A DNA stretch of 63,545 nucleotides, filler included, from Reticulomyxa filosa (Eukaryota > Protista > Foraminifera): assembly GCA_000512085.1 (NCBI GenBank). It is 19 parts of 19 records of this genome, joined end to end, with 100 filler letters (N's around TTAATTAATTAA, not from the genome) between each part and the next. Parts side by side here need not be neighbours in the genome. Positions count along the whole stretch, not along the records: positions 23,566 to 28,799 come from ASPP01013469.1; 18 more parts are not named here. The stretch is one strand, 5' to 3'. The translations under genes and the position numbers were made by a program. Each line of letters begins with the position of its first letter. Within the stretch, counting starts at the first letter, position 1. Below, in pieces: positions 22,901 to 28,944 of this stretch. Under the pieces are notes generated by a model. That model saw only the letters and a program-made list of their open reading frames with translations. It did not search any database and was not told the origin of the DNA.

Positions 22901-23567
22901 CAGCTAAATGTGTAATATTTTTTTTTTTGGTGAAAACTCTGATTAAAAAAAAACAAGAGAGAAAAAATAAAAATCAAAACGGGAAAATAAATTAAATAAC
23001 AGTGGCATTGACATGCAATATCAGATTTGGACATGTAGTACATGCCAGAATGGAAGTGAATGATGTATCTAGTGACACTGGTGGTAAAAAGAAAAAATAG
23101 AGTACTAGCCGTTTTAAATTAATATTACTCTTCTAAAAAATGTATTGCTTTTACTTCTTTAGTATTGTGTTCGTAGTGTTTCATTGTGTACTGATCGTTT
23201 TGTGCTTGTTTTTTACTTTGTTTCTGCAACACAGGAAATAAAAAGTGTGTATGCTCTTCAATTTTTTTCTTAACGCTTATTTCTGCATAATTTAGTTAGG
23301 ACAAAAAAAAAAATCAAATAGCTAACCTTCCAAGATGTTGGCTGCCATCCAATTGGCATGCACGTAATACTTCTTCATTATTTGTATTGTTCATTCCACA
23401 AATATCGGTCCATCAAAACAAAATATTTGTTATTTATGCACTTTTCCTTGCATCTTGATTAAATTNNNNNNNNNNNNNNNNNNNNNNNNNNNNNNNNNNN
23501 NNNNNNNNNTTAATTAATTAANNNNNNNNNNNNNNNNNNNNNNNNNNNNNNNNNNNNNNNNNNNNGT

Positions 23568-24695
23568 AGTGGTAGTAGTGGTGATTGGTCGTCCTCTTCC
23601 ACTGATAAATGGAATTGGGGAGGAAGCAGCTCCAATACCGGCACCAACACCAATGGTAGTTCAAACACTGGCAAGAGCTGGAATTGGGACTTTTCGTCTT
23701 CGTCTACTTCGACGCCGAGCTCCTCTGGAAATAGCTGGAGCTGGGATTGGGGTGGAACGAGCCAAAACAAACCGAAAGATCAAAGTCAAGACAAACAATC
23801 GAAACCACAGATCGGACCATGGGACTTTGGATCTGCATCTGCCAAATCCACACCTTCGTATACTGTCAATCAGATGCTCTATTTGTTACTACAAAAAAAT
23901 CCCTCTCAATTACTCGCAGACGACTCCAAACTGCTTGCGGATAACTCGCTCATTGACCCTTTGGAAAAAAAACGGTCGATTGCTTTCCCCGTTCCAATGA
24001 CTCAGTATTTGCGTTCGAAAAAAACGCAAACGTCCTCACATTCCATTACAAAGGACAAAGGCGAAAGAAAGGACCATTCAAGTCAATCTTCGCAATCTGA
24101 TTCATTAACACTTGCGACGCTGCCACTCCAAAGCCAATTGGAAAAGTCACTGTCCGAACAGGCCGTGTATCCACAACTCAACAATAAGGACTACTACTCC
24201 ATTCCGAGTATTACCTGCATTCGGAGCATGACCTTGGATCAACTAAGACAAGTATCCGATTTCACCATTGGAAACAAGTTTGGCAAAATCACTTTTCCTG
24301 GAAAAACTAATCTTTGTGGTGTTAATCTGGACGATGTCGTCACCATTCAATGGAAATCTGCTCGAGTGTATTACAAAAATAATATCAATATACCTCCTAT
24401 CGTTTCGTCTTTTCTATTTCTTTGCGTATTCATATCAAACTCATTGTTCAAAGTTCACTTTTTTACACAGGGCACAGGACTAAACAAATACGCAAAAGTC
24501 GAACTGTACCAGGTGTTTCCTCTTCCACCGCCAAATGCTGAAGAAGGGTGGAAACCAAGTCGAGCAGATATGCATCAATTGTCGTTGCAGTTGGAGTACT
24601 TGTGTTCCAAAGACGAAAATGCCACTTTTGACAGTTTTGATTTGAATCGAGGAATTTGGAAGTTTCATGTCCACCACTGGAATACTTTGGATTGA
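23568..24695 (+). CDS. NUP98: Nup98-family nucleoporin-like protein: Trp-rich low-complexity region + Nup98 autoproteolytic (peptidase S59) domain, 5' truncated
   Basis: The frame is open from 23568 into the 23874 ORF. The domain reads YYSIPSI...VSDFTIGNKFGKITFPGKTNL..VNLDDVVTI...PPI|GTGLNKYAKVEL...GIWKFHVHHW. A 69-bp GT-AG intron at 24402-24470 restores the PPxGxGLN motif. Confidence 0.9.
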   Translation, partial: SGSSGDWSSSSTDKWNWGGSSSNTGTNTNGSSNTGKSWNWDFSSSSTSTPSSSGNSWSWDWGGTSQNKPKDQSQDKQSKPQIGPWDFGSASAKSTPSYTVNQMLYLLLQKNPSQLLADDSKLLADNSLIDPLEKKRSIAFPVPMTQYLRSKKTQTSSHSITKDKGERKDHSSQSSQSDSLTLATLPLQSQLEKSLSEQAVYPQLNNKDYYSIPSITCIRSMTLDQLRQVSDFTIGNKFGKITFPGKTNLCGVNLDDVVTIQWKSARVYYKNNINIPPIVSSFLFLCVFISNSLFKVHFFTQGTGLNKYAKVELYQVFPLPPPNAEEGWKPSRADMHQLSLQLEYLCSKDENATFDSFDLNRGIWKFHVHHWNTLD

Positions 24696-25233
24696 CAAAA
24701 GACACCTCTCCTGCTACCTCTTTTGCAATAGGCTCTTGCTACTCCAAATCAAACACACTACTCAGTATTTTCAAAACAAAAGACAACTGCTCTTTTTTAA
24801 TCCACTTGCAAAAAATCCCAAATTGTCCAATCCGGAAACCTTTTTTGTTTGTTTAGTGATCAACATTCAGTAATACTTTTAAAAAATCAATTCAAAGTCC
24901 ATTGAACAAGAAAATAAAATATTATATCTAAAATGTAGAAAAATGGTTTCAGAGGAAGATCTCACTTGAAAGCAAGAGGCCTGGTGACTGCAAAAAATAA
25001 TAATGTACGAGCCACATTTATCAGAATTGGCAGAATATTTAGGCTGGGATTGTCCATTAAATGATTCTCACCAAGTAGCGCAGATTGCTCGAATTGTGGC
25101 CGAATATGCCGACGTTGAGCTTTTACTCTCGGTAGGCTTGACTGCACGCAAAAAAAAAAAAAAGTAAAATGTGTTAATACATGAGACTGCAAAATGAAAC
25201 AGCTCACATTCCGGTTTAATAGTTCCCGTGCGA

Positions 25234-27200
25234 TAATGTCGCACTATAATGCTGGGGACATATCTGCGGACGGTCAGTTGCTTGTTTTATACGGACTGAG
25301 TGGCTTTAGGTGTGCACTTGCCAGAGTGACACAATTCACAAACTCGCAAAGTTACGTAAAAACACAGCAACAAAATATACGTCAACTATGCACGAAAATG
25401 AACAAACAATCAATTGAAAGACGCGAACAAAGGCGCATACACAACCATCCCGATAAAGAAACCCTCTGTGATGTGTGCATGTGGAAGCGAAAGTGAAGAA
25501 AACGAGTGTTTGATCACATCGATTAAAGAAGACATTAATTGTTATTGGTTTGGCAACCAAAAATCAGTTACCATTTGGACGTCCTCCTGGGCTCGCATTA
25601 TCGACATTTGGAGACAAAATGCCAGCGTATACGTGTTTACTGCACCCAAGAAAGATATAATTGTTGGGGTCGAAGGTTTGAACAGTCTCTATGAGTGCAT
25701 ATTTCATTGAATTATTTTTTTTTTAAAAAAAAGAACAAAAACATTGCCAGGGCCCTCCGATCCGAGATGTGAACTGCTGCAACTGAGGTGTGGAAGCGCA
25801 CAAGAGGCTAAAGAAGGAGGTGGTGCGCGATTGTTGTCAAAATGGAATTTTAGGTTGCCAGAGTCTCAGAGATCGACGCCGAGCGGTCCGTTTGTGTTGC
25901 CACGGCACTGTGCGCATTTTTTTGAAGACAAACAGGCACTGATTTTTGTCACAGCCCAAAAAATGAGAGAAAAAAATATAAGAGAAAGAGAAAGAAGCGA
26001 AATATCAGAACTGGCCAAAGTGATTGGCGGATGGAAGATCTCATTATGTATTGTTTCCCCTGAGGCTAAAAATAAACCCAAAAACACAACCTCAACAACG
26101 AATACCAATAAATCACGTTCTCCACTCGCCAATCTCGCTTCTAGTGTAACAGACGAAATTGTTGACGAAGAGAAAAACGAGAAATCAAATACCAGCTATA
26201 AAACCAAAACCAGTGTAGTAACTACCCAATTTGATAAAATGTTCATTTTTTGAGTGTTCTTTCAAACCATGAGTATATGCATATATTATTACACGTTTGT
26301 ACACATCATTACACATCATTACACACCATTACATATCCGCACAGAAGACACTATCGAGCGCCAGAGATCGCTCAGCGGGGGTGCAATTCCAGAGATATCA
26401 CCAAAACCGACCCGTTCACAAAGAAGGACTATTGAAGCGAAATCCACAAGTTCTAATTCCTCTCCGCACTCGTTATCTCCAATAACAAGAAGTCGAAATA
26501 CGAGTGTAACGTCTCCTACTGGTTTTCATGAGAATATCAAGTCTCATTGGTCTGGTTAATTTTGTATTTACATATACATATGTATATATTTTTGTTATCC
26601 CCTTTTTTTTTTGTTTTGTTGGAATTAATGTCAATGATAGAACCTGCCAAACGCGTCCATGAGCTAAAGATTCCCAAAGAAGTCAAAGAGTTGTTTGAAC
26701 ATTGTCGGTGTCACTATATATTTTTTCATCAACTCTCAGGTAGCTTGGTCTTGCTCTTGCGCAAGACTGAAGAATCGATTTTGCTAATGGAAGAGTTGGT
26801 AGAATTTCGTAAGCATCTTATGGCCATCTATTCCTCAGTGGAACTGAGTAAGCGCACTTACGGACGCATTGCCGTCAAGATTGATCTCAATTTAGATAAT
26901 CCCCCACACTTCACCATTGAAAGCATAAGTATTGGAGCTGTTAAAATTCCAGAAGAGAAATGCAAGATACTGTGCTATGATCAAAAGAGAGCAGCGATCG
27001 TCTTAGATACCTTAACTGTCACTGAGAAACCTGACAAATCTTCCAAACCCACAAATATCCAAAAAAAATCTGACAAACCTCTGACCAAATACACCACAAA
27101 TGTCCAAAAAAAATCTGACAAACCTCTGACCAAATACACTACAAATATCCGAGTAATCCGATTGAATGATCTCATTTATCAGTGGAAGCGTTTGTATTGA
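25234..27200 (+). CDS. Hypothetical multi-exon protein
   Basis: Successive exon-like ORFs (~25234-25355, ~25489-25675, 25751-~26240, ~26345-26520, ~26640-27200) separated by AT-rich intron-like gaps; no family recognised. Confidence 0.6.
27051..27150 (+). repeat. 45-bp in-frame tandem duplication (~2.2 copies)
   Basis: The unit ACAAAT(A/G)TCCAAAAAAAATCTGACAAACCTCTGACCAAATACAC(C/T) starts at 27051, 27096 and 27141 and encodes TN(I/V)QKKSDKPLTKYT. Confidence 0.95.
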
Positions 27201-27542
27201 TATTGTGTGATGATTTGTGTTGTCTAAATCTTTGATCTTGCACTTTTCATGATAATATCTAGTTTTCATTTTTGACACAGGAGAATTACTCTATTTTTTA
27301 GAGGATATGATTTTAGTTTTTTATTTGTTAATATAATCAAAATATATTTTGGATATTATTTGAAAAATTTGTACATAAATCGACATTTGTTTTAAAGAAC
27401 AATTATCATATCCAATGAATATTCATCATTAATGCATTCTTTTTAGTTTTTGGAATGACAAATTTATTGATTTTGGAACTGTTTTGAAATAATAATTTAG
27501 TTTAATTTATGATCTTTTTCTACATTCTTTTATTGTTTAGAT

Positions 27543-27763
27543 TGTAAGAGGTAATGCGTTGAGAAAAAGGTGCGCTAAAAGTAACCGAAAAGTTTACTAT
27601 CTTAGCAAATCTTCTACAGAAAGTGATATTAAGTCAAGAAAAAGAACAGTTAACCAAACAACCAAGACAAACAGGAGAAAGTGAGCAGTAAGCTGTGTAG
27701 GTGAAAAAAGGGGGATTCAAGGTTAACTTGAATCTCACTATCAATTGGTAGTCTCATCCTACA
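27543..27763. mobile_element. Solo-LTR-like or short TG...CA element, 221 bp, 4-bp TSD AGAT
   Basis: AGAT|TGTAAGA...TCCTACA|AGAT with imperfect terminal inverted repeats. It shares GTAATGCG, TCAAGAAA, CAAGACAAA and ATCCTACA, in the same order, with 35940-36158. Confidence 0.75.
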
Positions 27764-28944
27764 AGATTAACATTCAGTTCATTTATTATTTGTTTTCATT
27801 TTTTCTATTTAATATATTTTCTCAAATTCTGATCTGATTTACTGAAAAACTATTGAAAGCAGATTTCATCTTTCTCTAAAATTATTTAGTAATATTTTCT
27901 TGAGTTTGTGATTTTCAGATTATTTGTTTCTATTTTCTATTATAAAGTACAGGGAATGCAAAAGAAAGCTTACACATAAAACGGCATTTTATATAATTGT
28001 AGTTCGATATTTTAGTTTTTTAATTTTTTTTGAAAATTGCTAAAGGATTTAGAATTTTAACAAAAGATGTGCTGTTGCGTTAGTACTGGAGTTTGCTCGA
28101 AGTTATAAAAAAATTTAGTGTAAGTCATGAATATTTGCGTAAATGAAAGTTTACGTTCAATAATAAAACATCAAAATTAGTTTTGAAATCATAATAGTTG
28201 GTCTTGCTTTGTAGTGTTAGTACATAATTATGCATCTAACATTAATTTATTTGTCAATAAAATATTTACAAAGAAGTTCTAGTTGATGAAATGCTCAAAA
28301 AGTATTAATTAATGTTTAGGAGATAATGAAAATTGAATATTTCGTCAAGATAATACCACTAACCACACAGCAATTACAGCAAAAGAATGTTTTGAACAAA
28401 ATAATATAAAATTATTATATTTCAATCTAAATTCTCCATACATAAACAAATCGAAAATCTGTGTTGGATAGTGAAAATAAAAATATTCAAAAATAGACAA
28501 TGCAGGTCAAAAGAAGAATTTGTAAACAATTTGAATTAGAATGTGAAAAAATTAACAATAAATATGCACAAACTTAACAAAGCATTGTACAATGCAAAAA
28601 GTGGTTTAACCAAATGTTAATTTTCATTAAAAACAATATTAACACATTTCTTATGCTTTTGAATTAGCTTGATTTGTTTGTCATTGGACAAAAAAAAGCA
28701 AAAAGAATTATAGATAATTAAAGACAAAGAAAGCAGTCAAAAACAATCATGCCCTCACAATGTACAAACTTTAAAAATAACAAACTCTGTAAAAAAAAAN
28801 NNNNNNNNNNNNNNNNNNNNNNNNNNNNNNNNNNNNNNNNNNNTTAATTAATTAANNNNNNNNNNNNNNNNNNNNNNNNNNNNNNNNNNNNNNNNNNNNC
28901 CCCTTTTTTTTTTTTTTTTTTTTTAATTAAACAAAAAAAAACAT

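What the first reader, a model, noticed from the sequence alone, without database searches (positions are those of the whole stretch)
23568..23873. Nup98-family protein with tryptophan (WxWG) repeats in place of FG repeats
Seen: the frame upstream of the listed 23874 ORF is open to the contig edge. It reads SGSSGDWSSSSTDKWNWGGSSSNTGTNTNGSSNTGKSWNWDFSSSSTSTPSSSGNSWSWDWGGTSQNK...PWDFGS, with 9 Trp and 2 Phe in 102 residues. The spacers are S/G/N/T-rich like an FG domain, and the region is fused to a clear Nup98 C-terminal domain. The ORF track misses it because the start codon lies off the contig. Established: Nup98 proteins use FG/GLFG repeats. Tetrahymena uses Nup98 paralogs with different repeat types (GLFG vs NIFN) to distinguish its two nuclei. 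WG/GW motifs in disordered S/G/N-rich regions are Argonaute-binding hooks (GW182, Tas3, NRPE1). Inference: this is either a Trp-based pore permeability barrier, possibly specific to a nucleus type in a multinucleate protist, or a pore-anchored Argonaute platform linking small-RNA silencing to the nuclear pore.
Basis: partly seen in the sequence, partly recalled or inferred. Interest (0 to 1): 0.82.

Follow-up and report, generated by a model that had tools for sequence, protein, structure and literature searches.

The report
Tryptophan-repeat Nup98 nucleoporin in a foraminiferan
A nuclear-pore protein gene of the amoeba-like foraminiferan Reticulomyxa filosa carries tryptophan where all well-studied relatives carry phenylalanine in their sticky "FG" repeats. 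This rare natural variant could test the rules by which the pore's selective barrier works.

Summary
The piece is Reticulomyxa filosa contig ASPP01013469.1. Frame 23568-24692 (+) is open from the contig edge. Its first 102 codons hold 9 Trp, 2 Phe and 1 Tyr in S/G/T/N-rich disordered sequence. The frame runs without a stop into a linker and a genuine Nup98 autoproteolytic domain (Pfam 1.6e-22; fold TM 0.82-0.85 to human Nup98).

The Trp stretch is almost certainly coding. It has coding-like GC, in-frame degenerate repeat units, and linker homology on both sides of ATG 23874. The NCBI model already includes it from 23676.

Ten of the 11 Trp/Phe residues sit in i,i+2 pairs (WNWG, WNWD, WSWD, WDWG, WDFG). 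The closest relatives, metagenomic transcript-like contigs, have FNFG/FSFG at the same kind of site. One relative mixes both residues (WNFG, FSWDFG). So Trp occupies the Phe positions of an FxFG-type repeat.

Other Trp-using Nup98 proteins exist. Kipferlia bialata has 23 WG against 3 FG, and one N-rich protein mixes WG and FG. I found no paper describing any of them.

I did not recover the missing N-terminus, so a short Trp patch is not excluded. Nothing tested supports the Argonaute-hook or nucleus-specific-paralog readings. Verdict: a new variant of a known kind, of moderate to high interest.

The parts
23568..23768 (+). Trp-rich repeat core (residues 1-67), cut at its 5' end by the contig edge. 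It holds 8 W and 1 F in S/G/T/N-rich sequence, with the motifs DW, KWNWGG, SWNWDF and SWSWDWGG.
   Evidence: Translation. Composition and W contexts. In-frame degenerate DNA repeats: D1 23668/23725 and D2 23610/23742. pLDDT below 50.
23769..23873 (+). Charged K/Q/D-rich spacer and the last hybrid motif PWDFGS (W85, F87), leading into the linker.
   Evidence: Repeat D3 23685/23820, 135 nt apart. Aligns to P-x-F-D segments of L002 and P0004.
23874..24185 (+). Disordered linker between the repeats and the anchor domain. ATG 23874 is an internal Met.
   Evidence: The mafft alignment places linker elements on both sides of this Met against P0004 and L002. pLDDT below 50.
24186..24401 (+). Nup98 autoproteolytic/anchor domain, first half. 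This is the same exon as the repeats.
   Evidence: Pfam PF04096, residues 207-277. PDB matches. pLDDT 88-98. Foldseek TM 0.82-0.85 to human Nup98 APD.
24402..24470 (+). A 69-nt GT..AG intron, in frame and without a stop, left unspliced in the NCBI model.
   Evidence: A gap of 23 residues against all relatives, between PPI and GTGLN. GC is 0.30 against 0.38-0.43 in the flanking exons. pLDDT 44-49.
24471..24695 (+). Autoproteolytic domain, second half. It ends ...FHVHHW-NTLD-stop (stop 24693-24695). The cleavage tripeptide HF|S is HW|N here, and no Nup96 part follows.
   Evidence: HW is seen only here and in P0002, while 68 of 72 other APDs have F.

Best explanation
Positions 23568-23873 are the 3' end of the repeat-domain exon of a Nup98/Nup116-type nucleoporin gene of Reticulomyxa filosa. 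The protein has the usual layout: a disordered cohesive repeat domain, a disordered linker, and a C-terminal autoproteolytic-fold domain that anchors it in the pore. The repeats are of the double-aromatic FxFG kind, but Trp has taken the Phe positions: WNWG, WNWD, WSWD, WDWG and WDFG. I infer that these Trp motifs do what FG motifs do. They would make weak hydrophobic contacts with each other and with transport receptors inside the pore channel. Shown: the coding status, the domain identity, the motif register and its homology to F motifs. Inferred: barrier and receptor-binding function, and pore localisation. Unknown: whether the unseen N-terminal part is also Trp-based; I put that at about 0.4. 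The gene ends four codons after the would-be cleavage site (HW|N). It therefore makes a non-cleaving, Nup116-like protein without Nup96.
For: 1) Domain identity: Pfam PF04096 at 1.6e-22; solved Nup98, Nup116 and Nup145N domains at 6e-11 to 6e-6; the AF2 model has pLDDT above 90 over the domain and Foldseek TM 0.82-0.85 to human Nup98 APD.
2) Coding status of the Trp stretch: GC is 0.49, against 0.30 in the intron and 0.25-0.33 in non-coding parts, with no AT-rich island. Three pairs of roughly 80%-identical DNA repeats lie 57, 132 and 135 nt apart, all multiples of 3. All 9 TGG are in frame 1. The NCBI model includes the frame from 23676.
3) Homology: the closest relatives are P0002 (52% identity), P0003/L002 and P0004/L003, plus L005. 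The full-length ones carry FNFG, FSFG or FNFD repeats upstream of the same linker and domain. L002 mixes W and F in the same motif: FNWN, WNFG, FSWDFG, FSWN and FNFG. The alignment pairs DKWNWGG with SKWNFGN and aligns linker elements on both sides of Met 23874.
4) Register: 10 of 11 F/W residues are in i,i+2 pairs.
5) Precedent: the Kipferlia bialata Nup98-96 protein GIQ84545.1 has 23 WG against 3 FG in residues 1-345, with one acidic residue. P0042 has 9 WG and 14 FG.
6) Weak lead: for residues 1-102, the nearest named clusters by language-model features are FG nucleoporins at 0.75-0.82.
Against: Only about 87 residues of repeats are visible. The stretch holds 7 acidic residues, several next to Trp, whereas cohesive Nup98 GLFG domains almost lack acidic residues (PMC9918544). 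That could weaken cohesion. Native receptors barely entered engineered Tyr-for-Phe phases (same paper), so Trp motifs may not bind standard FG pockets. The taxa of the closest relatives are unknown. The Atlas scores are below the level at which that tool counts a hit as evidence.
Confidence: 0.6

Rival explanations
1. Ordinary FG domain with a short terminal Trp patch. The unseen N-terminal 350-600 residues would be normal F-based repeats, and the five Trp clusters would be a local, functionally neutral drift of the last repeats.
For: Relatives use W only as a minority: about 25% of F+W in L002, and 6-10% in P0004 and L005. The visible repeats look like recent duplicates of one W-bearing unit, so a single unit could have spread locally.
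Against: Five consecutive clusters are W-based, 9 W against 2 F. Kipferlia shows that a whole Nup98 repeat domain can be W-based. Going from F to W needs two base changes per codon.
Confidence: 0.3
2. Argonaute hook. The Trp residues in G/S/N/D-rich disordered sequence would bind the Trp pockets of an Argonaute/Piwi protein, tethering small-RNA silencing to the pore.
For: The composition (W flanked by S, G, N, D in a disordered region) resembles known GW/WG hooks. That comparison rests on general knowledge of GW182, Tas3 and NRPE1. Cluster-to-cluster spacing of 19-26 residues would allow two pockets to be bridged.
Against: Only 2 of 9 W are WG and none is GW. The W residues sit in the i,i+2 register of homologous F motifs in relatives. 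The nearest feature-space clusters are FG nucleoporins, not GW proteins (weak). No Argonaute link was tested.
Confidence: 0.06
3. Not translated with the domain. The protein would start at ATG 23874, and the upstream stretch would be 5'UTR, intron or part of another gene.
For: ATG 23874 gives a 273-codon ORF. Frame 2 is also open across the stretch. In L001, the closest relative, a stop lies about 50 nt upstream of the domain in the same frame.
Against: GC is coding-like, the repeats are in frame, and frame 1 runs 102 codons without a stop. Linker homology extends upstream of the Met. A 273-residue protein would have a linker and an anchor but no repeats, unlike the full-length relatives.
Confidence: 0.07
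4. Nucleus-type-specific Nup98 paralog. As in Tetrahymena (GLFG against NIFN), the Trp type would mark one class of nuclei.
For: Tetrahymena has such paralogs (PMC5450191, PMC8421043). R. filosa is multinucleate, which I state from general knowledge.
Against: No second R. filosa protein with this domain turned up, although length limits and clustering could hide one. As far as I know, nuclear dimorphism is not described for R. filosa.
Confidence: 0.04

Closest known systems
Human Nup98, and yeast Nup116, Nup100 and Nup145N
   Same: The C-terminal autoproteolytic-fold anchor domain is shared. So is the layout of disordered repeats, disordered linker and anchor. Like Nup116 and Nup100, this protein ends at the domain without Nup96.
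   Different: The repeats are W-x-W-G/D instead of GLFG. Acidic residues are present in the repeats. The site is HW|N instead of HF|S. Whether a GLEBS motif is present is unknown, because that part lies off the contig.
FxFG repeat nucleoporins (Nsp1, Nup1, Nup2 and Nup153 type)
   Same: A double-aromatic i,i+2 motif followed by G, with polar and partly charged spacers.
   Different: Trp replaces Phe, and the repeats are attached to a Nup98-type anchor.
Tetrahymena MicNup98A/B (NIFN repeats)
   Same: A Nup98 homolog with a non-canonical repeat motif in a protist (PMC5450191).
   Different: NIFN keeps Phe. The paralogs there are tied to dimorphic nuclei, and no paralog was found here.
Kipferlia bialata GIQ84545.1 (annotated 'hypothetical protein', Nup98-96)
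   Same: Trp replaces Phe throughout the repeat domain: 23 WG against 3 FG.
   Different: It has single WG motifs in A/P/T spacers with almost no acidic residues. It keeps HF|SKYGL and a Nup96 part. It belongs to an unrelated lineage (Metamonada).
GW182/TNRC6, Tas3 and NRPE1 Argonaute hooks
   Same: Trp in disordered G/S/N/D-rich sequence.
   Different: Here W is rarely next to G, sits in i,i+2 pairs and aligns with F motifs of nucleoporin homologs.
PEX13 YG domain of peroxisomes
   Same: A natural selective phase built on an aromatic residue other than Phe (abstract of PMC12173945).
   Different: A different organelle, residue and protein family. This is an analogy only.

Membership tests
Nup98/Nup116/Nup145N family | C-terminal autoproteolytic (peptidase S59) fold domain | tested here: met
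   PF04096 at E 1.6e-22 and 80.7 bits against a cut-off of 28.4. PDB matches. AF2 model and Foldseek TM 0.82-0.85.
Nup98/Nup116/Nup145N family | N-terminal FG/GLFG repeat domain | tested here: not met
   The visible 102 residues hold 0 GLFG and 1 FG (WDFG). Trp motifs stand in their place. The remainder is off the contig.
Nup98/Nup116/Nup145N family | GLEBS (Rae1/Gle2-binding) motif inside the repeat domain | not testable with these tools
   Its expected position is upstream of the contig edge. In the relatives P0004 and L005 a GLEBS-like stretch is visible by eye, but Pfam did not call it.
Nup98-Nup96 self-cleaving precursor subtype | HF|S/T cleavage site followed by Nup96 | tested here: not met
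   The sequence ends HHW-NTLD-stop. The nucleophile position is Asn, and no Nup96 ORF lies downstream.
Argonaute-hook (GW/WG) proteins | Several GW/WG motifs in disordered sequence | tested here: inconclusive
   Disorder is met. Only 2 of 9 W are WG and none is GW. No hook predictor was available.
Argonaute-hook (GW/WG) proteins | Binding to the Argonaute PIWI domain | not testable with these tools
   This needs a pull-down. No R. filosa Argonaute was retrieved.
Nucleus-specific Nup98 paralog sets (Tetrahymena type) | Two or more paralogs with different repeat types in one genome | tested here: inconclusive
   Only P0001 was found for R. filosa. The searches have length and clustering limits, and the assembly is fragmented.

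The most novel reading that the evidence does not exclude
Reticulomyxa filosa builds the cohesive Nup98 barrier domain mainly on Trp rather than Phe, as Kipferlia bialata does independently. These organisms would then run a 'WG phase' nuclear-pore barrier with transport receptors adapted to it. That would be a natural counter-example to the reported universal selection against Trp in Nup98 FG domains.
Probability: 0.35. Interest if true: 0.8.

Novelty: new variant of a known kind. Interest (0 to 1): 0.62.

Why it matters
The pore's permeability barrier is explained by cohesive FG repeats. Nup98 FG domains are described as conserved in all eukaryotic clades, with selection against Trp (PMC9918544). 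In the same paper, engineered Tyr-for-Phe repeats still phase-separate but largely exclude native transport receptors. That points to co-evolution of the motif with receptor pockets. Natural Nup98 proteins that use Trp would give ready-made test cases for three questions: which properties of the aromatic residue matter, whether receptors co-adapt, and how often the motif has been exchanged in evolution. R. filosa shows this partly, and Kipferlia shows it over a whole domain. The papers I could search describe neither.

Tried and rejected
- Missing N-terminus and other Trp-rich R. filosa proteins: word searches with residues 1-102 found only the protein itself (candidates of 206-656 aa) or nothing (candidates of 56-178 aa). 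The HMMER search returned only hits through the anchor domain among the 150 shown. These blanks say little for low-complexity sequence.
- Metagenome scan for more relatives: it gave only L005 and a re-find of L003.
- L001, the contig of the closest relative: the frame has a stop about 50 nt upstream of the domain, and an unrelated ORF lies in another frame (no Pfam hit). It may be chimeric or hold an intron. I did not use it for architecture.
- P0042 source: its contig is not on record. I think its gi number belongs to a ciliate, but that is from memory and unverified.
- Minus-strand or frame-2 coding of 23568-23873: rejected. Those readings have no homology and are not continuous with any domain.
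- Tandem Repeats Finder saw no array in the Trp stretch. The repeats are degenerate and interspersed.
- Pfam does not call Nucleoporin_FG or GLEBS on any of the relatives, including the F-based ones. Their absence here is therefore uninformative.

Full report
**What the piece is**

The piece (window 23566-28799) is the whole 5234-bp contig ASPP01013469.1 of the Reticulomyxa filosa assembly GCA_000512085.1. NCBI annotates a 'nucleoporin, partial' on it at window 23676-24873 (P0001).

**Check of the observation**

- Translating 23568-24698 (+) gives 375 codons without a stop, then a stop at 24693-24695.
They hold 9 W, 2 F, 1 Y, 30 S, 12 G, 10 T and 9 N.
- Nine W in 102 residues has binomial P = 2e-6 at a 1.1% background. 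At the 1.6% W content of the rest of this protein, P = 4e-5.
- TGG encodes Trp in this gene: the family-conserved Trp of the G-x-W-x-F strand is a TGG codon.

**The domain it is fused to**

- Residues 207-277 and 302-371 match Pfam PF04096 (Nup98-96 autopeptidase S59) at E 1.6e-22. They match solved Nup98, Nup116 and Nup145N domains at 6e-11 to 6e-6.
- An AlphaFold2 model built on a 33-sequence alignment has block-mean pLDDT of 88-98 over residues 201-270 and about 95-97 over 311-370. It is below 50 over most of residues 1-174.
- Foldseek places the folded part on the human Nup98 autoproteolytic domain, with TM 0.82-0.85 normalised by target length.
- The two halves are separated by 23 residues that no relative has. 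These residues correspond to 24402-24470, which starts GT and ends AG. That stretch has GC 0.30, against 0.38-0.43 for the flanking exons, and pLDDT 44-49. I read it as a 69-nt in-frame intron.
- The NCBI model leaves this intron unspliced. It also removes the conserved last strand (FHVHHW) through a 3' intron that looks spurious.

**Is the Trp stretch coding and in frame?**

An open frame alone is weak evidence, because frame 2 and parts of the minus strand are also open here. Four stronger points support coding in frame 1:

- GC is 0.42-0.57 across 23566-23873. The intron is at 0.27-0.30 and non-coding parts of the contig at 0.20-0.33. No AT-rich island appears inside the stretch.
- Three pairs of roughly 80%-identical DNA repeats lie 57, 132 and 135 nt apart. 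All three spacings are multiples of three. These are degenerate repeat units kept in phase.
- All nine TGG codons are in frame 1.
- In a mafft alignment with the relatives, linker elements align on both sides of the Met at 23874. Upstream, P-W-D-F-G-S aligns with P-N-F-D and S-T-F-D. Downstream, KKRSIAFPVP aligns with RQINRVAFQP.

ATG 23874 is therefore an internal Met. I could not obtain read-level evidence.

**What the Trp residues are**

- The closest relatives by HMMER are P0002 (52% identity over the domain), P0003 and P0004 (41-42%), all from JGI environmental contigs. L005 comes from the same sample as P0004.
- P0004 (719 aa) and L005 (813 aa) are complete ORFs with N-rich repeat domains of the double-aromatic kind: FNFG, FSFG, FNFD and FDFN.
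- L002 carries P0003. Its upstream ORF is offset only by a frameshift in a run of nine A. That ORF mixes the two residues in the same motif: FNWN, SKWNFG, FSWDFG, FSWN and GFNFG.
- In R. filosa, 10 of 11 F/W residues are in i,i+2 pairs: WNWG, WNWD(F), WSWD, WDWG and WDFG. The alignment pairs DKWNWGG with SKWNFGN.

The simplest reading is that Trp occupies the Phe positions of an FxFG-type repeat in a clade that tolerates either residue. R. filosa is the extreme case, with 82% W in the visible part. L002 has about 25% W, and P0004 and L005 have 6-10%.

**How unusual this is**

- Of the top HMMER hits, 92 had enough low-complexity sequence to score. In most of them the Trp share of aromatic residues in those parts is 0-5%.
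- The clear exceptions are R. filosa and two others:
  - P0110 is Kipferlia bialata GIQ84545.1, annotated as hypothetical. Its residues 1-345 hold 23 W, every one followed by G, with 3 F and one acidic residue. An HF|SKYGL site and a Nup96 part follow. The WG exons are visible in the genomic locus L004.
  - P0042 is an N-rich protein with 9 WG and 14 FG that ends at HF.
- Ng et al. 2023 list selection against tryptophan among the features of Nup98 FG domains conserved across all eukaryotic clades. They also report that Tyr-for-Phe repeats phase-separate but largely exclude native receptors (PMC9918544).
- Full-text searches found no description of Trp-type nucleoporin repeats, nor of Reticulomyxa or Kipferlia pore proteins.

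**Mechanism**

I commit to the FG-equivalent reading. The protein would be anchored through the autoproteolytic-fold domain, and the disordered repeats would contribute hydrophobic Trp contacts to the channel meshwork and to transport receptors.

- Shown: the architecture, the disorder, the motif register and the homology to F motifs.
- Inferred: cohesion, receptor binding and localisation.
- A caution: there are seven acidic residues in the 102, several next to Trp. That is unlike cohesive GLFG domains and closer to charged FxFG domains.
- The language-model look-alikes of residues 1-102 are FG nucleoporins at 0.75-0.82. That is below the tool's level for evidence and counts only as a lead.

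**Rivals**

- A short Trp patch on an otherwise F-based domain stays a serious possibility (about 0.3), because the N-terminal 350-600 residues are off the contig and I did not recover them.
- The Argonaute-hook reading fits the composition. It is not needed, and the register speaks against it: 2 WG, 0 GW, and i,i+2 pairs aligned to F motifs.
- The nucleus-specific paralog idea has no support.
- Non-translation is unlikely given the composition, the repeat phase and the linker homology.

**C-terminus**

- The cleavage tripeptide, HF|S or HF|T in 36 of 72 comparable domains, is HW|N here, and the ORF stops four codons later.
- Trp at this position occurs otherwise only in P0002 (HW|T). Of the 72 domains, 68 have Phe.
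- The relatives P0002, P0003 and P0004 keep an S/T-[IV]-Y-G tail. R. filosa has lost it.
- This predicts a non-cleaving, Nup116-like protein. No Nup96 coding sequence follows on the contig.

**Verdict**

This is a new variant of a known kind: a Nup98-family nucleoporin whose visible repeats are Trp-based. It has an independent and more complete parallel in Kipferlia. The weak points are the truncation at the contig edge and the lack of transcript or functional data.

Noticed in passing
window 23676-24873 (NCBI model P0001): The deposited gene model looks wrong in two places. It keeps the 69-nt intron 24402-24470 as coding. It also splices out the conserved last strand FHVHHW and replaces it with an unrelated tail.
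   Followed up: yes
window 24675-24695: The autoproteolytic site reads HW|N instead of HF|S/T, and the ORF stops four codons later. Trp at this nearly invariant Phe position is shared only with the environmental relative P0002 (HW|T). Of 72 other domains, 68 have Phe.
   Followed up: partly
L004:2650-8357 (Kipferlia bialata BDIP01001508.1, protein P0110 = GIQ84545.1): This is a Nup98-96 precursor annotated as hypothetical. Its whole repeat domain is WG-based: 23 WG, 3 FG, A/P/T spacers and one acidic residue in 345 aa. It has a normal HF|SKYGL site and a Nup96 part.
   Followed up: partly
P0042 (1160 aa, source eukprot/MetaClust, gi 403369179): This N-rich Nup98 homolog ends at HF and has mixed WG (9) and FG (14) repeats. 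I did not verify its organism, and its contig is not on record.
   Followed up: partly
L002:790-880: The repeat/linker ORF and the domain ORF of this environmental relative are offset by one frame at a run of nine A. This is probably a homopolymer sequencing error or a slippery site.
   Followed up: partly
L001:1-240: In the closest relative's 1-kb contig, an unrelated 67-codon ORF ends about 30 nt before the called start of the domain ORF. The domain's frame has a stop about 50 nt upstream. The contig could come from a compact genome, hold an intron, or be chimeric.
   Followed up: partly
window 27049-27150: A 45-nt tandem repeat (2.3 copies, 94% match) lies inside ORF 26547-27200 and encodes a repeated KKSDKPLTKYTTN unit. 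That ORF and the other annotated gene on the contig have no Pfam match.
   Followed up: no
window 26288-26337: A short TACACATCAT tandem array of 3.8 copies lies between the two downstream genes.
   Followed up: no
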